Below the pieces are notes generated by a model, which was given only the letters and a program-made list of their open reading frames with translations, was not told where the DNA came from and made no database searches. The position numbers and the translations under genes are program-made. From IMG/VR virus record IMGVR_UViG_2162886007_000107, positions 1 through 64,000 of that record: a stretch of 64,000 nucleotides of DNA; one strand, given 5' to 3'. Shown piece by piece: positions 1-56,873 of the stretch (its first letter is position 1; each line of letters begins with the position of its first letter).

Positions 1-11
1 TTTTTTTTGCT

Positions 12-851
12 TTAGTTAATGCAAAGGTTGTGGGTAACAATCCAGTCTTCTACTACAAACAACTTATCTTCACTGTCGATATTAATGCAGATCGTTTCAG
101 TCGGGTGTTCTTTAACGATGCCAACAATCTTTAAGCGACTTGCTGCAAATCTGGCAATGTCGTCTTGCTCGATGTCTCGATGTCTGGCAGTAACTACATA
201 ACCGTCTTCAACCTTTTGAAGATCAGCAATACCGCCAACACTCCATGCCAGGTGTTGGAAGTTAAGAGCACTTTGTTTGTGCTCGGTAATGTAGCGAACA
301 GTACCGTTGCTTGCTACGCAGCCTTCATTGGTGCGCATGGCTGTAGCAATAGCTCGACGGTCCTGGTAATGAAGTTCTTGTATTTCACGGTTAACAGTAT
401 GACGTTCGCCAATTAGCATCATGGCAATGTCTTTAACAAATTCATCGGCAATACGTTTCTCCGCACCACTGATCTCACCAACCAGAGGGATGGCGTATTC
501 GAACTCATTGAAGTGAGCAATGATGTCGGCGGTGGTAGTAACGTACGGAGCAACACTATTACCCTCGTATACTTCCCAAAGATGCAACGGATGACTTACA
601 GCCTCACGTCCGTCCTCAAAGATGAACTTGTAGCAGTCTGTGACGCCCTGTGGGATTACTTCGGTCACTGAGGCTATGTTACCCATAGGACCAATGACCT
701 TACTGCCCTCACGCAGTTCCTTTAAAGCTAGCCAACCGCCAGGTACTTTTACCTTTACGTTGTACGGCATGGCTTTACCCTTGCTAACCATATTAAGCTT
801 AGGTTCGTTATTAACCTTTAACCCTACCATGGATTTTAAGAGGTTGATCAT
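12..851 (-). CDS. Free-standing intein-like (Hint + degenerate LAGLIDADG) protein, class-3 type
   Basis: GK|AMP at the block A start, HLW in block B, block F Cys (TETICINID), IVTHN in block G; only 26 aa upstream and LCIN downstream; AGGA RBS before the ATG. Confidence 0.8.
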   Translation of the reverse strand: MINLLKSMVGLKVNNEPKLNMVSKGKAMPYNVKVKVPGGWLALKELREGSKVIGPMGNIASVTEVIPQGVTDCYKFIFEDGREAVSHPLHLWEVYEGNSVAPYVTTTADIIAHFNEFEYAIPLVGEISGAEKRIADEFVKDIAMMLIGERHTVNREIQELHYQDRRAIATAMRTNEGCVASNGTVRYITEHKQSALNFQHLAWSVGGIADLQKVEDGYVVTARHRDIEQDDIARFAASRLKIVGIVKEHPTETICINIDSEDKLFVVEDWIVTHNLCIN

Positions 852-47452: not shown

Positions 47453-50119
47453 ATGAACGAAAGGAGCCCGGTAGACGACACACCATTGGTGCGTCACGCC
47501 GAAAGTCGCCTCTGGGCTAACCCGGAGGAGAATGGTCAGTACCAAGTAAAAATGGTGCGCATTACTCCAGATGAAGGGGTAGTGGTGAACTTCGGTTACA
47601 TGGGGAAGTGGCGGTCATTACCTCGTGAAAAACGTACCTTCCACATCTTTACCGTAGCAGGCTTGGTTCCGGGGTATTGGAACTTCCGTAACAACGTCCT
47701 GTTGCGTAACCCGTTGGACCGTTGGGTCAATGCGGGTCGCTTGTGTAAGACTCGTGGTGTAATGCTGGATCTCTACGACGAGAAGGGTTTCCAGTATCCT
47801 CGCAGCTATGCTTGGATCATGCACACTTACGACGGCCTTACACTGATTGCTTTTGAGAAGTTCCCACAATACCCTATCCCTTCCAAGAAGGCGATGTGGT
47901 TCCGCTGCTACACCCCAAGTAGCCCAGTGGATAAGTGGGAGAACTCCACTCCAGATCGTAACCCCTACGAATACGAGTGTATGCGTTACTCCCGTCCTGA
48001 TGAAATGCAGACCTTCATGGCCATGTACAACAGGATGAAGAGCAAGCCAGGCTACACAGGGGTGTTCCATAACGGTGCTTTCTTTAAGGGTGCTCCGAAC
48101 GCTATCCCTGACCTGAAGTCGAATGACCTGGTAGAGATCTGGCACGATCCAACCGTACTGCGTGTTGAAACCTACGCTTACAGCAGCATGTTCGACTTCT
48201 ACTCGGAGTTGGATAAGAAGCGCAAGGTTATCGTGCATCCGCCGAAACGTAAGGGTGATTTCACTCTGCGTTACTTCGATGACAACGATTACTTCATGAC
48301 CGCCCGTAACAACCGAGGCTTGATGCTTCCTCGTTACGACGTTACTGCTGTACGGCAGTTAACTCATGCTGACGTTGCGATTGCGGATGAGTTTGTCCAG
48401 AACGCTGCTACTTACCACCCTGACCTGGCCAAGGTGGAGAATATCCAGATTACTGTGTTGGTTCGGAAGAGTAGTTGGCAGTTTGATTGGCCTCAAGAGC
48501 ATCAGCGTTTCCGTTACCTTTATCGGTTGCCGGATGCGGATATCTTGCGAGCCATGACAGGTCCTCGGGCTCTTGTCCCTGAGTGGGAAGCCAAGACCTT
48601 GGAGGCGGGAGCAGTCAGTTCCTTCACTCGTCTTCAGTGGAACAAGATCAATCGTGAGAACTCTGCTTTGGCGGAAGGTTACAACGCGGCTACGCGTGTG
48701 CTGGCTGAAACTCCATTGCCTGCAACTTATGCTCCTGGTACCTTGGGGATTGATGTTCCTTACAGTTACCGTGAAAGCTACACAGCTTGGGAGTATGACG
48801 ACAAGGGTCATTTGATTGGTTACTACAACGCCTACAACCGCTCTAAGTACAGCCCGGTCAATCCGGAATGCGTGATGGTTGAATTCGTAGTAGGTGAAGC
48901 GGGTCGTGAGTTCGATATCACAATCACCAACGTTACCACCAAGGTAGATCCTAATTGGGACCTGCGAGTTTACACGGTGGGTTGGAGCATTGTTACCAAC
49001 ACCACGGTAGGTGATTGGATAGACGTTACGGATGACAAGACTGTCTACGATATCGAAGACGGGAACGTGGTGTGGAAAGGTTTGGACACGGTTAACAAAC
49101 GCGGCATCCTTGTTACCAACAAGAAGAGCATCGCGTATACCTTCCAGCTTGAACACATTGACCACAGTCTCTCGTTTGCTCTGACAGACATTTACGTTGG
49201 CGGTGGACATCTCTTCCCATACAGCCCAGCCGAGTTCGATCTGTGGATGAACAAACATCCCCTGATTGAGAACGTTGACTGGTTGTGGAGAGACGGTCGT
49301 ATCTACGTCCACAACAAGGAGTTCATCGTAGATGGCCCGCAAGAGTTCACTGTACGAGCGCATTCTTTCTACGATAATCTGGTTAGACCTAACTCTGACA
49401 CCGAGCTTGGGTTCGTGGACGGTGGGTGTATTGGTCGCACTGATCGTTATAACCTCCGCGGCGATCGAGTTACTCGTACGGTTATTAATGGGGCGTTGTA
49501 TTTCAGTGATTCTGTTCCTCGCACTGAGCGGCTCGTACCCGCAGACCAATGGGCCGAGCTTAATGGTCGTCCCTATTGCGTCAAGCACATCTACGCTCCC
49601 ATCAAAAGCGTGGTGGACTACAAGCACTTCCCATTGAGGGCTCGTAGTCGGGAAACGGATCAGAACGTTAGCGATTACCTTACTGAATATCTGCCTAAGC
49701 CTCGTACTCTTGCTGAAGAGATTCATTACGAGAAAGGGGATAGTCCTGGTCCAATCGGGACGAAGGCAGCCATTACCAACATCCAGGATAAATACCGTCT
49801 GTTCAGTCCGTTCATGAATGCCGTGACAAACGCCATTCTGAATAAGCTGCTGACAGTACCTGAGTTCGGGGATGGGGAAACCACGTTCAGTGAGCAGCAA
49901 GTCCGTGATCTGGTTAAGCAGTACATCTGGTGGTTGGAGTTTGATCCACTCATCCTGAACTATGATCTGCGGTTCTTTGCGGTAATGCCTTACGCAAACT
50001 TCGAGATGGTTGAAGTAACAGCTCCGGAATTTGTTTTCCTGAAGATTGTGAACCGACTGTTCCTTAAATCCGCCTGTCACATTGAAGGGCATTATGGAGT
50101 AACCAAGTATGGCAGGTAA
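47453..50119 (+). CDS. Virion structural (baseplate-region) protein (phiKZ gp27 position)
   Basis: ~890 aa; synteny. Confidence 0.7.
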   Translation: MNERSPVDDTPLVRHAESRLWANPEENGQYQVKMVRITPDEGVVVNFGYMGKWRSLPREKRTFHIFTVAGLVPGYWNFRNNVLLRNPLDRWVNAGRLCKTRGVMLDLYDEKGFQYPRSYAWIMHTYDGLTLIAFEKFPQYPIPSKKAMWFRCYTPSSPVDKWENSTPDRNPYEYECMRYSRPDEMQTFMAMYNRMKSKPGYTGVFHNGAFFKGAPNAIPDLKSNDLVEIWHDPTVLRVETYAYSSMFDFYSELDKKRKVIVHPPKRKGDFTLRYFDDNDYFMTARNNRGLMLPRYDVTAVRQLTHADVAIADEFVQNAATYHPDLAKVENIQITVLVRKSSWQFDWPQEHQRFRYLYRLPDADILRAMTGPRALVPEWEAKTLEAGAVSSFTRLQWNKINRENSALAEGYNAATRVLAETPLPATYAPGTLGIDVPYSYRESYTAWEYDDKGHLIGYYNAYNRSKYSPVNPECVMVEFVVGEAGREFDITITNVTTKVDPNWDLRVYTVGWSIVTNTTVGDWIDVTDDKTVYDIEDGNVVWKGLDTVNKRGILVTNKKSIAYTFQLEHIDHSLSFALTDIYVGGGHLFPYSPAEFDLWMNKHPLIENVDWLWRDGRIYVHNKEFIVDGPQEFTVRAHSFYDNLVRPNSDTELGFVDGGCIGRTDRYNLRGDRVTRTVINGALYFSDSVPRTERLVPADQWAELNGRPYCVKHIYAPIKSVVDYKHFPLRARSRETDQNVSDYLTEYLPKPRTLAEEIHYEKGDSPGPIGTKAAITNIQDKYRLFSPFMNAVTNAILNKLLTVPEFGDGETTFSEQQVRDLVKQYIWWLEFDPLILNYDLRFFAVMPYANFEMVEVTAPEFVFLKIVNRLFLKSACHIEGHYGVTKYGR

Positions 50120-51845
50120 CATGTTTGATAGCTCGCCGGTGACGAACCTCCTCACCGGTGCAGCTCCTGCTACTCAACCCACTGGGTTGAACAAGGGGGA
50201 ACGACGTTCTATCCTCTACATTGAGGACATGTACGACCCAGACATTCACCCGGTTAGCGAAAAAGAGAACTACGTGGTTCCTTTTGAGAACCAGGCGATC
50301 ATCGATGTGGTCAACGGCATGTGGTATCGCTGTATCCATGTGGACACCGAGGGGACCTTGAAGGCTACCTTGGTTCCTCTGGTCTGGCAGAACCCGACTG
50401 ACGTTAACGTGGTTGAGCAGGATTGGTTGTTTGGCATGAAGGGCGGCCCATTCATTGGTGAAGCTCTGCTGGCTATCGATTTCAGTGTTCGTCCGAACGT
50501 AGCACGTGTGGATAGTACCATCATGCGTCCTGGTGCTGACTATGCGCTGCTTTATCGTGGTCAGACCCCTGATGGTAAGGGTCGGATCATTTCGGCCGTA
50601 TACAACCAGAACGGGGACCTCATCACCAATGAGATTCCTACCCCTTTGGCAGAGATTATCGATCGCACCAACTCGATGATCAAAACCACTGGTCAGTTCA
50701 GCGTTACTGAAAACGAGGAAGCCCTACCTAACGGTACTCAGGCTGTCTTGTGCTTCTACGCTACTGGTGGTGTCTTCATTCCTCCGGCCCAACTTGTACG
50801 TGTGCAACATTCTGCATACATGAAGGATCATCGGATCGGGATTAAGTACATCGATCGGATTCAACTCATCTCGCCATGGTTCACCAACAGTAACCAACCG
50901 GATACCTTGGTGCTTCCTATCAACACGCCGATCAGTCAGATCGAATTCCGTGCTGAGAAGATCTACAACGATGGGTCGAGTTCTGGTCCTCTACCAGTAA
51001 ACGGTACTGTGTTCACGCTGCATGGTTTGAACGAGTATCGTCCGTCCTATCCTGGTCAGAGCGCAGAAGTGGTGTTGATTGCCGAGTTGGCTGATGACGA
51101 ACGCATGCTCTTGCCTCAACCTGGTAGTCCGAACTTTGCTCGGGCAACTTACACCATGGTTGCCGGTGCGGTGGAAGGAGCCTACTCTCCACGCGTCTTC
51201 ACTTACCCACAGTGGGATTCGGCGATCAACGGTTACAGTCTTCAGCACTTCCTGTATGACCTGGACCGTAAGGCTTGGGTTGATGTCACTCAACAGGTTA
51301 CGCTCAATGACAAGAGCCCGGCATGGCGTCCAGCCGCTTACGGTACGGCGCAGAGCATGATCTTCAACATCAACCTGCGGGATGTTGCTCCTACCTACAA
51401 GTCGGAGACCTTCATCCAGTACACCGAGATCGTGTTGTATCGCGACCTCAACACCGCAGGCAAGAAGTGGGACGTCAGCTTCGTGTTCGACAAACCTACT
51501 TACGGTGCTCTCAACTTGAAAGCCACCAACAATGGTGCTGCAAGTAAAGCGAACATCCGTAACGAGATCTGGTATCAGAAGGACTGGATCGACGCAATGT
51601 ACTGGGGTGTGTACCCAAGCTACAACGTGTGGGATGAAGACAAGGCTCCTGAACCAACGCACTTCTACCTGCGTCATCCAACCGATGGTCGCAAGTGGTT
51701 GTTCCCGTTGGAACAATGGTCTGAAGATCTGCCAATGCCTATCTCGATGCAGCCTGGTACTACCTGGTACGTTGACTGGGTACGTCGTGATTCGACCGGT
51801 AGTGAATTGCAGCTCGCAACAACTGGCGTTACCGTTACGTTGTAG
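50109..51845 (+). CDS. Virion structural protein (phiKZ gp26 position)
   Basis: 578 aa, beta-rich; directly upstream of terminase. Confidence 0.7.
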   Translation: MAGNMFDSSPVTNLLTGAAPATQPTGLNKGERRSILYIEDMYDPDIHPVSEKENYVVPFENQAIIDVVNGMWYRCIHVDTEGTLKATLVPLVWQNPTDVNVVEQDWLFGMKGGPFIGEALLAIDFSVRPNVARVDSTIMRPGADYALLYRGQTPDGKGRIISAVYNQNGDLITNEIPTPLAEIIDRTNSMIKTTGQFSVTENEEALPNGTQAVLCFYATGGVFIPPAQLVRVQHSAYMKDHRIGIKYIDRIQLISPWFTNSNQPDTLVLPINTPISQIEFRAEKIYNDGSSSGPLPVNGTVFTLHGLNEYRPSYPGQSAEVVLIAELADDERMLLPQPGSPNFARATYTMVAGAVEGAYSPRVFTYPQWDSAINGYSLQHFLYDLDRKAWVDVTQQVTLNDKSPAWRPAAYGTAQSMIFNINLRDVAPTYKSETFIQYTEIVLYRDLNTAGKKWDVSFVFDKPTYGALNLKATNNGAASKANIRNEIWYQKDWIDAMYWGVYPSYNVWDEDKAPEPTHFYLRHPTDGRKWLFPLEQWSEDLPMPISMQPGTTWYVDWVRRDSTGSELQLATTGVTVTL

Positions 51846-51927: not shown

Positions 51928-54900
51928 ATGTCTTTGGACCGCTCTGAAATTCTGAAGATCGCTAAGGATATGCAGAATTACTTGGGGGCGCATTTACTTC
52001 CCAAGAAACTGATCGACGATGAATTGAACCTTGTCGACTCAGATGCCAGGACAGATGACGATACAGTTTTGGCGCATTTTGAAGAAGACAGTCTGCACGG
52101 TATCAAGACTGTTCGTTTTCTGAAAGACTTTGCTCGCTATCGAGCAACAGCTGACACAGAGACAAAGAACACCAGCTTTAAACGTACCGCAGAGATCTTC
52201 CGGCAACAGGGGATTAAGAACTATTTCTTCCTGTTGCAGTTGAACAACCCGATGCTCAAAGGTGTTGACCCTTACTCGGAGAATTTGACTAACGAGCAAG
52301 TTCTCTGGATTGCTGAGGAATGCCGGACCAACTTCTGGTACTTCCTTCGTGAGGTTTGTAAGGTTCGTGCTGACCGGTTCTTCCAAGCTAACCGCGGCAA
52401 CATCAGCTTTATCTGGAACTATCTGAACCACATCACCAGTTACATGATCATGCCTCGGCAGCAGGGTAAGTTCCAAGAGAACGAAACTCCTGTACGGATC
52501 ATTCCTCGTGAGATCGTTGGTAACACTAATCCTGCTGACCATTGGACAACTATTGGTCAGTTGCGCATCGGTGATCAGGTAGTAGACCATCACGGTGAGG
52601 CTAGTACTGTTATCGGTGTTCACCCACAAGGTAAAAAGCGTCTTTACAAGATTACCTTCAGTGACGGTCGTTCTACCAATGCTGGTGCTGAGCACTTGTG
52701 GTTAATTGGTGATCATTCGGATACTCTCAATGGAGAATGTATCTGGGACGAGAAGACCACCGCTGAATTGCTTTACAAGTGGCAGAACGGTGTCAAGATT
52801 GAACTGCCGTTGATCAAGCCTGAGGACAACTGCAAGAACAACTTCATCATCAAGCCTTACATCATGGGCCTGATGTTTGCAAACGAAGTTGTGGATGGAA
52901 AGATCTACGTAGATCCGATCAAGGAGATCACGGCTAATGTTCTGCGTCATGGCACACCTACTCATCTGACCTATCGGGTTGATAATGGTAGTCAGTACCT
53001 GGAACGGGCTGATAAATCGCCTCTGACCCTTAATCAGGAAGCTGGTCTCCCAGCAGACTACCTGGAAGGTTCTTTGCAGGACCGTAAGGACCTCTTAGAG
53101 GCGTTTCTACACAAATCTCGCACTACCTCTGAGGGTCGGTTCCTACCATCCTCTAACAACGTTCTAATGACTCAGATTCAATATCTGATTCGTGGCTTGG
53201 GCGGTACTGCCAAGAAAGTTGAAGGTGGGTTGCAGTTCACTCTGCAAGGCGATGCTGGTAACGAACTCTTCATTTCCGATATCAGTTATTTGGTCGATGC
53301 GGATTGTACTTGCATTGAGGTGGATAACGAGGAACATCTGTATTTGGCGGAAGACTTCATTGTCACGCACAACACAGTATCAGTTCAGGTAATTAACTTC
53401 TGGCTGACGTATATCAACGGCCGTGGTTACAAGACTCATGTCATTACCTTGAAGAGTGATAACCGTGCTCAGTTCATTGACGCGGTTAAACGGATGAGGG
53501 CCTGTGTTCCTAAGTATTTGGTTAACTCCACGTACAAGGACAAGGACGCAGGTACTTATCTAACGTATAAAGCTTTTGGTGATGAGCTGGTAAACACCTT
53601 AACCATTAGCGTTCCTCAGATCGGTAAGGATGCCGCGGGGGACATGGGTCGTGGTTTGACGGTAGGGACAACCTTCCTCGACGAACCGGCCTACATTTCG
53701 TGGATCGAGGAAATCGTCAACGGCGCGATGCCTTCTGCTTTGACAGAGATGGAGTTGATGAGGGCCAACGGGTTGCCGTACGGGATTGGTTACATTACAA
53801 CACCAAACACAACTCTGCACCCATCTGGCGACTACATGTTCAAGAAACTCATGTCTGCTACCGAGTGGCGTGAGAAGTTCTTTGATTCGTACAGTGAGAG
53901 TCATCTCAAAGACAGGCTCATTCGGGCTTCTCCAGAGAAGACGACCAGTCCGGCGATCAGCATGGTTTACAACTACATGCAGCTTGGCAAGAACAAGGAC
54001 TGGGTGAAGCGAACCATTGACGATCTGAAACTTAGTTTGTCTAAGGCTAAGATCGACTTGCTGTTGATGTGGGTTGAAGATGGCGAGAACCGATTGTTTG
54101 ACGACCTTACTCGTGAAGCGATCAGTAACGTTAAACGACAACCAGTGTGGAGTAAAGAGTATCGGAACAGTGGGTTGTTCATGGACTTCTTCTGTACCCA
54201 GGAAGAGTTAATCCGAATGGGCAAGAAAGAGTACAACGATCACTTCCTTATTGGGGTCGATACCTCCTCCGCTATCAACAAGGACGCCTGTACGCTCATC
54301 ATTCGCTCTATGAAGACTGGTAAGGTCATTGGCGTAGGTCGCTATGCCCTGGCTATGCTGGACGACGTTACAGCGATTATTGTGGACATGCTGGAAACCT
54401 TGCAAAACAGTCTGTTGGTCATTGAACGTAACTACGCTCACCACATGATCGATAGTCTGCTGATCCTTCTGCCTGCAAAAGGCATGGATCCATTCATGCG
54501 TATCTACAATCAGGTTTACCAAAGCCCGATTGACCATCAGAAAGAACTGGAGCTAGTGCAGTCAACCAAGTTCGCCTACAGAGATAAGAACTTCTACCTG
54601 AAGCTCAAGCATCTGTTTGGTTTCGTTACCACTGCTAACTCTCGGAAGATTCTGTATGGCTTGATTCAAGAAGCCGTGGCTGTGACTGGTTATGGTATCA
54701 ATTACGACAAGTTGGCTGATGAACTGATTAACCTCAGGACTAAGGGCGACCGTATTGACCACGACGCGAAACAGCACGATGACTTGGTAATCGCATGGCT
54801 GCTCACTTACTGGTTCATTAAGCTGGGTGCTAACAAACCGTTCTACGGAATCATGGGTGCGTTGGCTCTTAGCGATACACAGAACCTGTTGGATGCTGGC

Positions 54901-55158
54901 AAAGAAAGTAAACAGGCTCCGATGGATCCGAGTATCAAACTGTTCTTTGAACAAGTAAGGTTGAAAATCAATAACCTTACCGAGGAGCTGCTGCGTACTA
55001 CGGACAACATCCTGGCACTGCGGTTGGAAGCAGAGATTATGAAGTACTCTAAACTCCTGCCCCCAGAAACTGCCAAGCTGCTTACTATCGATACATTGCT
55101 GGAAAAGGCGCGTCTCGAAAGAACGCGTCGAGTTATGGAAAACAGAAGAGCAGCATAA
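51928..55158 (+). CDS. terL: Terminase large subunit, intein-containing
   Basis: Walker A PRQQGK|T split by an intein, Walker B FLDE, YITT coupling motif, nuclease motifs GVDTS, IERN and HDD. Confidence 0.95.
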   Translation: MSLDRSEILKIAKDMQNYLGAHLLPKKLIDDELNLVDSDARTDDDTVLAHFEEDSLHGIKTVRFLKDFARYRATADTETKNTSFKRTAEIFRQQGIKNYFFLLQLNNPMLKGVDPYSENLTNEQVLWIAEECRTNFWYFLREVCKVRADRFFQANRGNISFIWNYLNHITSYMIMPRQQGKFQENETPVRIIPREIVGNTNPADHWTTIGQLRIGDQVVDHHGEASTVIGVHPQGKKRLYKITFSDGRSTNAGAEHLWLIGDHSDTLNGECIWDEKTTAELLYKWQNGVKIELPLIKPEDNCKNNFIIKPYIMGLMFANEVVDGKIYVDPIKEITANVLRHGTPTHLTYRVDNGSQYLERADKSPLTLNQEAGLPADYLEGSLQDRKDLLEAFLHKSRTTSEGRFLPSSNNVLMTQIQYLIRGLGGTAKKVEGGLQFTLQGDAGNELFISDISYLVDADCTCIEVDNEEHLYLAEDFIVTHNTVSVQVINFWLTYINGRGYKTHVITLKSDNRAQFIDAVKRMRACVPKYLVNSTYKDKDAGTYLTYKAFGDELVNTLTISVPQIGKDAAGDMGRGLTVGTTFLDEPAYISWIEEIVNGAMPSALTEMELMRANGLPYGIGYITTPNTTLHPSGDYMFKKLMSATEWREKFFDSYSESHLKDRLIRASPEKTTSPAISMVYNYMQLGKNKDWVKRTIDDLKLSLSKAKIDLLLMWVEDGENRLFDDLTREAISNVKRQPVWSKEYRNSGLFMDFFCTQEELIRMGKKEYNDHFLIGVDTSSAINKDACTLIIRSMKTGKVIGVGRYALAMLDDVTAIIVDMLETLQNSLLVIERNYAHHMIDSLLILLPAKGMDPFMRIYNQVYQSPIDHQKELELVQSTKFAYRDKNFYLKLKHLFGFVTTANSRKILYGLIQEAVAVTGYGINYDKLADELINLRTKGDRIDHDAKQHDDLVIAWLLTYWFIKLGANKPFYGIMGALALSDTQNLLDAGKESKQAPMDPSIKLFFEQVRLKINNLTEELLRTTDNILALRLEAEIMKYSKLLPPETAKLLTIDTLLEKARLERTRRVMENRRAA
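52471..53373 (+). mobile_element. Class-3 intein (301 aa) in terminase Walker A, with degenerate LAGLIDADG domain
   Basis: Removing it restores RQQGK-TVSV; HLW, block F Cys (CTCIEV), VTHN|T. Confidence 0.92.
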
Positions 55159-55520: not shown

Positions 55521-56873
55521 TTAGTCGTAAAGGTCTTTTGATAGGATTCGGATAACGATGTAGAGACTCAGACCTGCCCGAAGCGATTGGACCGTAATGG
55601 GGGTCTTAACGCCAGATAGTTCCTTAACGATCTCTTCACCGAGTGTACGTACTTCTTTAACGGTATCGTTCTTGCTCTTTGGAGCACCGTAAGCTCCACG
55701 AAGTCTGACCAGCACATCATAGACGTTTGTCTTCTTGATGTTGTTTGCGTGTAGATACTCGATCATGTGAGTGATCACGGCGTCGATGAATTGCTTGCCT
55801 TTAGGCTTCTTGGGATTCTTGTAGTACCCAGGGAGCTGTTGGACAATATACTCCAGCTTGGTCGTGTTCGGATGTTCAAGTACCGATGACGCATACTTAA
55901 CAAGCTCTGGTTTAAAGAAAGATGTTTCCTCTGTGAGGATGCGCTCAATGTACGTGTTGTACGCCACTGCGTCTTTCTGGACAGACTTGATTGTCACCTC
56001 ATCCTTAAGGTTGACCTTTGCCCCTTCAATGCTCACGATGTCAGTTTTGTTCTTAACGTCGTGGAAGACTTTGTTGATATCGTTGATGAGCCGGCGGAAC
56101 CGGTTCTGGATATCACCGACCATGTAGATGATCTTCTTGTCATCTTCCATTCGGCTGTAAGCTTCGAAGTGAATACCGGTCTTGGGATCGAGGATAAACT
56201 CAGCGCGAGCCTCGATAAGCTTCTTCCAAGAACCGTAACGCTTGATGTCATACTTCAGACTCAAGCGGTTGTAGGTCTCAATCACCACCTCACGACGAGC
56301 CTGGTAGGGATAGTCGTTATGGATGATGCTGGTAAAGCACTTGTAGTGGTACATGCAGATGATATCCACCAAAGCCTGGTGTTTAGTCTTCTGGTCCAAC
56401 TTCGAGTGATATACCCGGAACAACAGATAAGGAATAGTCAGGTTAAAGACATCCCCTACTACGTTCCATTCCTTCTCTACAGCCTTAACCTCGTGGAGGT
56501 TCTCCTTGAGTTCCTCTTCATCAACGTCGAAGATCTCAGAGAACCAAAGGTTACGGTCCCCAGTAGTGAAGGTAATCTTCTGCAACCCCAAATAGGGACT
56601 ACCGAAGAATTCCTGGTAATCGACAACCCCTACACGACGAGTGATGAAGTTGTAGACATACCGACGCAGTTGCAAAGCCCATTTGTTATCGATGTCCAGG
56701 TACTTACCGAACTTATCACAAACAGCTTTGATCGCGTTAGAGCTTTCATAGTTGATGTCGGAGAACAAAGCCTCCATACCGTCAACACAACCAGGGCCGT
56801 GATCGGACTTGGGTTCAAACCAGCTGAGGATATCCAGCTTGTCACTAGGTGGTAGCTCTTGGTAGATCGACAT
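55521..56873 (-). CDS. Conserved protein, probably head-packaged
   Basis: 450 aa with AAGGAG RBS; N-terminal VDGMEAL candidate cleavage site. Confidence 0.7.
   Translation of the reverse strand: MSIYQELPPSDKLDILSWFEPKSDHGPGCVDGMEALFSDINYESSNAIKAVCDKFGKYLDIDNKWALQLRRYVYNFITRRVGVVDYQEFFGSPYLGLQKITFTTGDRNLWFSEIFDVDEEELKENLHEVKAVEKEWNVVGDVFNLTIPYLLFRVYHSKLDQKTKHQALVDIICMYHYKCFTSIIHNDYPYQARREVVIETYNRLSLKYDIKRYGSWKKLIEARAEFILDPKTGIHFEAYSRMEDDKKIIYMVGDIQNRFRRLINDINKVFHDVKNKTDIVSIEGAKVNLKDEVTIKSVQKDAVAYNTYIERILTEETSFFKPELVKYASSVLEHPNTTKLEYIVQQLPGYYKNPKKPKGKQFIDAVITHMIEYLHANNIKKTNVYDVLVRLRGAYGAPKSKNDTVKEVRTLGEEIVKELSGVKTPITVQSLRAGLSLYIVIRILSKDLYD

What the first reader, a model, noticed from the sequence alone, without database searches (positions are those of the whole stretch)
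52471..53373. Terminase intein begins with phenylalanine
Seen: the intein interrupts Walker A (RQQGK|F...THN|T), so it must splice for DNA packaging, yet residue 1 is Phe. It has the class-3 W-C-T triad, and its LAGLIDADG motifs are decayed (GLMFANE, LLEAFLHKS). Known: class 1 inteins start with Cys/Ser, and class 2/3 inteins usually start with Ala. Inference: a rare natural variant that is no longer mobile and could act as a conditional switch on packaging or mask the terminase from host sensors until it splices.
Basis: partly seen in the sequence, partly recalled or inferred. Interest (0 to 1): 0.62.

Follow-up and report, generated by a model that had tools for sequence, protein, structure and literature searches.

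The report
Class 3 terminase intein starting with Phe
A jumbo phage's DNA-packaging enzyme is interrupted by a self-splicing class 3 intein whose first residue is phenylalanine, and this is ordinary because that residue does no chemistry in this intein class and varies freely among relatives.

Summary
Window 52471..53373 encodes a 301-aa intein inserted between Lys and Thr of the Walker A motif (PRQQGK|TV) of the only large terminase gene (51928..55158) of an EL-like jumbo phage. Three intein-less homologues have a gap at exactly these residues. The intein starts with Phe and carries every class 3 mark: H75/W77, C281, T299-H300-N301 and Thr+1.

Phe1 is not a rare oddity. In 79 related terminase inteins, residue 1 is M 22, L 20, F 10, A 10, Y 8, P 5, Q 2, D 1, E 1, while the W-C-T triad, His-Asn and Thr+1 are invariant. 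A quick tree needs at least 19 changes of residue 1, and the window lies in a clade where Phe is the commonest state. Six independent contigs use the same TTC codon. Class 3 is defined by a non-nucleophilic residue 1, and its prototype starts with Pro.

The endonuclease domain keeps its fold but has lost the catalytic acid of motif 1 across the whole clade. Intein and extein have co-diverged, which fits an old, immobile, vertically inherited intein that must still splice. Nothing here supports the proposed switch or masking role. This is a new member of a known kind, of low interest.

The parts
51928..55158 (+). Terminase large subunit precursor gene (1076 aa plus stop), the only TerL in the 236-kb phage record
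   Evidence: ORF and start. PHROG phrog_2 terminase large subunit, E 2.9e-43. C-extein 70% identical to Pseudomonas phage EL TerL. Single copy in the record.
51928..52470 (+). N-extein (181 aa), ending in the Walker A residues PRQQGK
   Evidence: The phrog_2 match ends exactly at residue 181. Alignment with intein-less TerLs.
52471..53373 (+). Class 3 intein, 301 aa, from Phe1 to Asn301
   Evidence: The gap in intein-less homologues equals residues 182-482. PDB sequence hits to class 3 DnaB inteins 6bs8, 6rix and 6riy. AlphaFold2 model with pLDDT 90 matches PI-SceI-type full inteins and class 3 DnaB inteins.
52471..52473 (+). Phe1 codon (TTC), a non-nucleophilic first residue
   Evidence: The same TTC stands in L021, L022, L009, L019 and L020. 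Residue 1 takes nine different residues among 79 relatives.
52471..52503 (+). Block A (FQENETPVRII). E5-T6-P7-V8 fits the usual block A pattern with Phe at position 1
   Evidence: Read directly from the sequence. Q2, V8 and R9 are invariant in the 12-sequence alignment. An 11-residue loop insertion follows it, relative to 6bs8.
52693..52701 (+). Block B H75-L76-W77, with the class 3 Trp at B:12
   Evidence: H75 and W77 are invariant in 79/79 and align to HQW of 6bs8.
52795..53256 (+). Degenerate LAGLIDADG-type endonuclease-like domain (about intein 109-262). Motif 1 lies at 52867-52887 and motif 2 at 53092-53118
   Evidence: No Pfam LAGLIDADG hit. Motif 1 has no conserved acid in the TerL clade, while the outgroup P0077 keeps GDG. 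Only the window has His in place of the family's conserved Asp at position 214. About 16 residues are missing before block F. The fold is retained in the model. dN is 3-5 times that of the exteins.
53311..53313 (+). C281, the block F position 4 cysteine and predicted splicing nucleophile
   Evidence: Invariant in 79/79. Aligns with Cys118 of Msm DnaBi1. D285, H289 and Y291 sit at the same offsets as D324, H328 and F330 of MP-Be DnaB (PMC2807308).
53365..53376 (+). Block G T299-H300-N301 followed by Thr+1
   Evidence: All four are invariant in 79/79.
53374..55155 (+). C-extein (594 aa), beginning TVSVQV and completing Walker A as GK-T

Best explanation
This is a splicing-competent class 3 intein sitting in the P-loop (Walker A, between Lys and Thr) of the large terminase of an EL-like jumbo phage.

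Inferred mechanism, taken from the characterised class 3 pathway: the thiol of C281 (block F position 4) attacks the Lys(-1)-Phe1 peptide bond and forms a branched thioester. The N-extein is then passed to the hydroxyl of Thr+1. Asn301 cyclises, assisted by His300, and releases the intein. An O-to-N shift restores PRQQGK-TVSV, which gives an intact ATP-binding loop.

Residue 1 plays no nucleophilic part, so it is free to vary. Phe is simply the commonest state in this intein's sub-clade. The position does prefer hydrophobic residues: M, L, F, Y, A or P in 75 of 79.

The homing endonuclease domain has lost its catalytic acid across the clade and is shrinking by deletions in several lineages. 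The intein therefore appears to be an old, immobile passenger, inherited vertically with the terminase gene and kept only because it must still fold and splice.
For: Shown here:
- Exact boundaries from three intein-less homologues.
- Sequence homology to solved class 3 inteins, with the catalytic Cys aligned.
- K-1, H75, W77, C281, T299, H300, N301 and T+1 invariant in 79/79 relatives, while residue 1 takes nine values: M22 L20 F10 A10 Y8 P5 Q2 D1 E1.
- At least 19 changes of residue 1 on a quick ML tree. The window sits in an 18-member clade with F10, Y5, P2 and L1.
- The same TTC codon in six independent contigs.
- A single TerL in the record.
- A confident model (pLDDT 90) with a HINT plus LAGLIDADG-like fold.
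- Motif 1 acid absent across the clade, and lineage-specific deletions giving intein lengths of 255-349 aa.
- Intein and extein identities correlate (Spearman 0.86), and no pair has a more similar intein than extein.
- dN/dS stays well below 1 in all intein parts.

From the literature: class 3 is defined by a non-nucleophilic residue 1 plus WCT plus Thr/Ser+1. It is found in helicase and terminase P-loops. The Pro1 prototype still splices, less efficiently, after P1A, P1S or P1C (PMC2807308). The K|T P-loop site is the 'classic' terminase insertion site (PMC5050341).
Against: Splicing was not observed; it is inferred from conservation and from the need for a working terminase. Block B has Gly where many class 3 inteins have Asp (DxxH), so activation of the N-terminal junction may differ in detail. 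dS is saturated in most pairs, so the dN/dS values are rough. The tree is a quick search, not the finished careful one. I found no Phe1 among the 13 cultured-phage inteins I sampled, so Phe1 is so far seen only in metagenome-derived sequences.
Confidence: 0.85

Rival explanations
1. The intein is kept as a post-translational switch on packaging. Splicing, and hence terminase activity, would be held back under particular conditions, for example oxidation or metal binding at the catalytic C281 (with the neighbouring C279), or until a certain stage or location of the infection.
For: The intein has persisted through deep divergence of the host gene without a working endonuclease, and its non-catalytic domain is still under purifying selection. 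A class 3 DnaB intein is reversibly blocked by oxidation through a disulfide on its catalytic Cys (PMC6195587). The window has a C279-x-C281 pair.
Against: C279 is present in only 38 of 79 relatives, so it is not a conserved feature. Persistence is equally explained by the difficulty of deleting an intein precisely from an essential P-loop. Closely related phages (VP4B, Kc263, AH04) do without the intein. No experiment or sequence feature here points to regulation.
Confidence: 0.1
2. Phe1 has a specific role. A bulky aromatic first residue would strain or position the scissile Lys-Phe bond, or tune splicing speed, so the change is adaptive rather than neutral.
For: Residue 1 is not random. 75 of 79 are hydrophobic or Pro, and F and Y together dominate one clade. 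In the MP-Be DnaB prototype, changing Pro1 lowered splicing and raised side cleavage (PMC2807308).
Against: Within the Phe clade the residue has switched to Y, P and L while everything else catalytic stayed fixed. Sister clades use M, L or A with the same invariant active site.
Confidence: 0.15
3. The intein no longer splices and the terminase gene is dead or needs a helper.
For: The endonuclease motifs are decayed. The window alone has lost the family-conserved Asp214 and about 16 residues before block F.
Against: All splicing residues are intact and invariant. The frame is open over 1076 codons. This is the only TerL in a record that CheckV rates complete. The HINT parts and the exteins show strong purifying selection. 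The changes peculiar to the window lie in the endonuclease-like domain and in the stretch between it and block F, not in the splicing blocks.
Confidence: 0.03
4. The endonuclease domain is still active with non-canonical residues, and the intein is still mobile.
For: The domain's fold and several motifs (YLEG, DR, QYLxRxLGGTA) are strongly conserved. The intein's presence among chimallivirus-type terminases is patchy.
Against: No conserved acidic residue at the end of motif 1 anywhere in the clade. No Pfam LAGLIDADG match in 76 relatives. Intein divergence tracks extein divergence with no outliers. No antisense or out-of-frame endonuclease ORF with a family match.
Confidence: 0.05

Closest known systems
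Class 3 inteins. Prototype: mycobacteriophage Bethlehem DnaB intein. Solved structures: M. smegmatis and M. chimaera DnaBi1 (6bs8, 6rix, 6riy).
   Same: Non-nucleophilic residue 1; Trp at B:12; Cys at F:4; Thr at G:5; His-Asn end; Thr+1; insertion in an ATPase P-loop. There is direct sequence similarity in blocks A-B and F-G, and the fold matches with TM 0.70-0.73 by target.
   Different: Residue 1 is Phe rather than Pro or Ala. Block B reads G-A-E-H-L-W rather than DxxH-x-W. There is an 11-residue loop after block A. It carries a degenerate endonuclease domain, whereas the solved DnaBi1 inteins are mini-inteins.
Terminase inteins of cultured EL-like and related jumbo phages: Pseudomonas phage EL gp011, Erwinia phage RisingSun gp240, Shewanella phage FishSpeaker.
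   Same: Same gene, same K|T Walker A site, same size class (about 300-320 aa), and same invariant splicing residues. The inteins are 34-40% identical and the exteins 65-70%.
   Different: They start with Gln, Leu and Met. The window's intein has a further deletion of about 16 residues and a His in place of the conserved Asp of motif 2.
Mycobacteriophage TerL1-a P-loop inteins (Kelley et al. 2016, PMC5050341).
   Same: The insertion lies between the invariant Lys and the nucleophilic Thr of the terminase P-loop, which that paper calls the 'classic' site. Class 3 inteins are common in phage terminases.
   Different: The terminase family and host range differ. Most actinophage inteins keep a canonical LAGLIDADG endonuclease (10.1101/2025.01.02.630785), whereas this clade has lost the motif 1 acid.
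PI-SceI / VMA-type inteins with a LAGLIDADG homing endonuclease (1vde, 7qsu, 1dq3).
   Same: Two-domain architecture of HINT plus LAGLIDADG-like fold; these are the best whole-model fold matches (TM about 0.6 by query).
   Different: Those are class 1 inteins (Cys1) with active endonucleases. Sequence identity is only 10-14%.

Membership tests
Class 3 intein | First residue is not Cys/Ser/Thr | tested here: met
   Phe1. The boundary is fixed by intein-less homologues.
Class 3 intein | Trp at block B position 12 (two residues after the block B His) | tested here: met
   H75-L76-W77, invariant in 79/79; aligned to HQW of 6bs8.
Class 3 intein | Cys at block F position 4 | tested here: met
   C281, invariant in 79/79; aligned to the catalytic Cys118 of 6bs8.
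Class 3 intein | Thr at block G position 5, followed by His-Asn | tested here: met
   T299-H300-N301, invariant in 79/79.
Class 3 intein | [quoted passage not shown] | tested here: met
   Thr+1, invariant; it is the Walker A Thr of intein-less homologues.
Class 3 intein | Splicing proceeds through a block F branched thioester and needs the block F Cys | not testable with these tools
   Needs expression, a C281A mutant and detection of the intermediate.
HINT (Hedgehog/intein) fold | Splicing domain with the HINT fold | tested here: met
   AlphaFold2 model with pLDDT 90. Foldseek probability 1.00 to many intein structures.
LAGLIDADG homing endonuclease (active) | Two LAGLIDADG helices, each ending in a catalytic Asp/Glu | tested here: not met
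   Motif 1 ends A-N-E in the window and has no conserved acid in the clade. Motif 2 ends L-H-K-S. No Pfam LAGLIDADG hit. The fold is still present.
Terminase large subunit (T4 gp17-like, phrog_2) | Walker A P-loop restored after removal of the insert; homology on both sides | tested here: met
   phrog_2 E 1e-36 on the N-extein, ending at the junction. C-extein 70% identical to EL TerL. PRQQGK|TV is continuous in intein-less homologues.

The most novel reading that the evidence does not exclude
An endonuclease-dead class 3 intein has been carried vertically in the Walker A loop of EL-like jumbo-phage terminases for a very long time, with its non-catalytic domain still under selection. It could have been co-opted as a timer or redox/metal-sensitive gate on DNA packaging, with residue 1 (F/Y/M/L) tuning the splicing rate.
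Probability: 0.08. Interest if true: 0.6.

Novelty: new member of a known kind. Interest (0 to 1): 0.2.

Why it matters
It matters little for biology as it stands. It is one more class 3 P-loop intein in a phage terminase, and its Phe start is exactly the kind of variation the class 3 mechanism allows.

Two modest points are useful. First, the residue-1 census (nine residue types over an invariant active site) is a natural mutational scan showing which first residues class 3 inteins tolerate, which may help protein engineers. Second, this clade of jumbo-phage terminase inteins is a clear case of an intein that has outlived its homing endonuclease and is inherited vertically. It could serve to test whether such stranded inteins acquire regulatory roles.

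Tried and rejected
- Shifted junction: rejected. Three intein-less terminases place the gap exactly at residues 182-482.
- Sequencing error at the Phe codon: rejected. TTC stands in six independent contigs, and contigs of two runs from different studies bridge the junction.
- Intein-less allele in the same populations: no contig joining 52470 to 53374 was seen in four runs. Contigs cannot prove absence.
- Antisense or out-of-frame endonuclease inside the intein, as described for some actinophage inteins: four overlapping ORFs gave no Pfam match.
- Second terminase copy that could make splicing dispensable: none found.
- Pfam on the intein gave only a sub-threshold Hom_end_hint hit, so identification rests on PHROGs, PDB homology, alignments and the fold.
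- Literature check for an explicit list of class 3 first residues: Tori & Perler 2011 and the supplementary tables of Tori et al. 2010 are not held. I therefore could not see whether a Phe1 intein was already listed in InBase.
- dN/dS: synonymous sites are saturated in most pairs, so only the ranking extein < HINT < endonuclease-like domain is trusted.
- The careful ML tree did not finish; the quick tree was used.
The N- and C-exteins were searched separately by reference.

Full report
**What is there**

The window is the first 64 kb of a 236,430-bp virus record that CheckV rates complete. A 1076-codon open frame at 51928..55158 (+) encodes the large terminase subunit.
- Its first 181 residues match the PHROG terminase family phrog_2, and the match stops exactly at Lys181.
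- Its last 594 residues are 70% identical to the terminase of Pseudomonas phage EL, 68% to Erwinia phage RisingSun and 65% to Shewanella phage FishSpeaker.

The phage is therefore an EL-like jumbo phage known only from metagenomes. Public runs that hold the stretch are rhizosphere, soil and indoor samples.

**Boundaries**

Between the two terminase parts lie 301 residues encoded by 52471..53373. Aligning the precursor with the intein-less terminases of Vibrio phage VP4B, Kosakonia phage Kc263 and Erwinia phage AH04 gives a single gap covering precursor residues 182-482. Those proteins read PRQ(Q/S)GK followed directly by TV. The insert therefore splits the Walker A loop between Lys and Thr.

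The Phe codon is real:
- The same TTC is found in five other contigs from other samples.
- Contigs from two runs of different studies bridge both junctions.
- No intein-less joint was seen in four runs, though contigs cannot prove absence.

**It is a class 3 intein**

A sequence search of solved structures finds the class 3 DnaB inteins of M. smegmatis and M. chimaera (6bs8, 6rix, 6riy) and the related gp41-1 intein. Block B aligns (EHLW against QHQW). In block F the window's C281 lies on Cys118, the catalytic residue of 6bs8 (PMC6195587).

An AlphaFold2 model built on a 12-sequence alignment is confident (mean pLDDT 90). As a whole it matches two-domain inteins such as PI-SceI, TliVMA and PI-PfuI. 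In its splicing domain it matches the class 3 DnaB inteins, with TM 0.70-0.73 by target.

All sequence marks that define class 3 are present: a non-nucleophilic residue 1, W77 two residues after H75, C281, T299-H300-N301 and Thr+1. D285, H289 and Y291 sit at the same offsets from the Cys as D324, H328 and F330 in the prototype (PMC2807308). One small difference is that block B has Gly where many class 3 inteins have the Asp of DxxH.

**Is Phe1 unusual?**

No. A word-based search of 5.8 billion proteins returned 79 related intein-bearing proteins at the same kind of site, nearly all of them jumbo-phage terminases.
- Lys-1, H75, W77, C281, T299, H300, N301 and Thr+1 are invariant in all 79.
- Residue 1 is M 22, L 20, F 10, A 10, Y 8, P 5, Q 2, D 1, E 1.
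- A quick maximum-likelihood tree of the inteins needs at least 19 changes of residue 1.
- That tree places the window in an 18-member clade made of F 10, Y 5, P 2 and L 1. Phe is thus the commonest state among this intein's closest relatives.
- Cultured phages with class-3-type inteins in ATPase P-loops start with Q (EL), L (RisingSun, Proteus phage 10), M (FishSpeaker), A (N1M2, SL2, SPLA3, PhiPA3), E (Vibrio 2 TSL-2019), D (Aeromonas D6), V (Kwan, HM1) and R (RcTiptonus).

The literature defines class 3 by a non-nucleophilic first residue that co-varies with the WCT triplet. Its prototype starts with Pro and still splices, less well, after P1A, P1S or P1C. Such inteins were noted from the start in helicase and terminase P-loops (PMC2807308). 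The K|T P-loop position is called the classic terminase insertion site (PMC5050341).

One nuance remains. Residue 1 is hydrophobic or Pro in 75 of 79, so the position is not entirely free. I also saw no Phe1 among the 13 cultured examples I sampled.

**Endonuclease domain and mobility**

The middle of the intein (about residues 109-262) is predicted to keep a LAGLIDADG-like fold, but the sequence signs of an active enzyme are gone.
- Pfam finds no LAGLIDADG domain in the window's intein, and none is recorded for 76 relatives.
- The first motif has no conserved acidic residue anywhere in the terminase clade, whereas an outgroup intein (P0077) still reads GDG.
- In the second motif the window alone has His where all others have Asp.
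- The window lacks about 16 residues before block F.
- Other lineages carry their own deletions, giving lengths of 255-349 aa.

Intein and extein pairwise identities rise and fall together (Spearman 0.86 over 3003 pairs). In no pair is the intein more alike than the extein. That is what vertical descent predicts and what recent homing does not.

The endonuclease-like domain changes 3-5 times faster than the exteins at non-synonymous sites but is still far from neutral. dN/dS is about 0.15-0.25, with saturated dS, so this is rough. No antisense or out-of-frame endonuclease ORF has a family match. 'No longer mobile' is thus well supported by inference.

**How it most likely works**

The record has one terminase gene and an interrupted P-loop, so the precursor has to splice. 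By analogy with characterised class 3 inteins:
1. C281 attacks the Lys-Phe bond to form a branched thioester.
2. The N-extein moves to Thr+1.
3. Asn301 cyclises.
4. An acyl shift restores the intact Walker A loop.

These steps are inferred, not shown.

**Switch or mask?**

Nothing found here supports either idea. A redox toggle is known for a different class 3 intein (PMC6195587), and the window has a Cys two residues before the catalytic Cys. That Cys is present in only 38 of 79 relatives, and related phages manage without any intein. I keep a regulatory role as a low-probability possibility.

**Verdict**

This is a new member of a known kind, of low interest.

Noticed in passing
window 12..851 (-): A second class-3-type intein ORF (279 aa). 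A 26-residue leader ends in SKGK. The intein then starts with Ala, has HLW in block B and a block F Cys, and ends THN. It is 35% identical to the intein in the helicase gp166 of phage EL. Only four residues (LCIN) and a stop follow it, 11 bases from the start of the record, and residue +1 is Leu. Neither helicase extein of EL has a match in the record. Either the record is cut or mis-joined at this intein, or this is an orphaned intein without a host gene.
   Followed up: partly
window 1..25: The record begins with a run of eight T followed by GCTTTAG (read from the minus strand). This may be an assembly end artefact, and the record has no terminal repeat according to IMG/VR.
   Followed up: no
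window 53226..53262 region; relatives L009-L020: Different lineages of the terminase intein carry different deletions in the endonuclease-like domain: about 16 aa in the window, 43 aa in L019, and more in P0016, P0017 and P0025. Meanwhile YLEG, DR and QYLxRxLGGTA stay almost invariant. The reason for this strong conservation in a domain without catalytic residues is unexplained.
   Followed up: partly
window 50109..51845 (+) and 55521..56873 (-): The terminase gene is flanked by a virion structural protein (phrog_3430, E 3e-154) and a conserved protein of unknown function (phrog_2921, E 1.4e-145). The gene order is the same as in phage EL gp009-gp013.
   Followed up: no
phage records N1M2, SL2, Miami, PhiPA3, EL gp166 and others: RefSeq annotates several intein-bearing jumbo-phage terminases and helicases as 'DarB-like antirestriction', 'DNA helicase' or 'putative ATP-dependent DNA helicase'. 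These names probably come from the intein or P-loop similarity rather than from the host protein.
   Followed up: no
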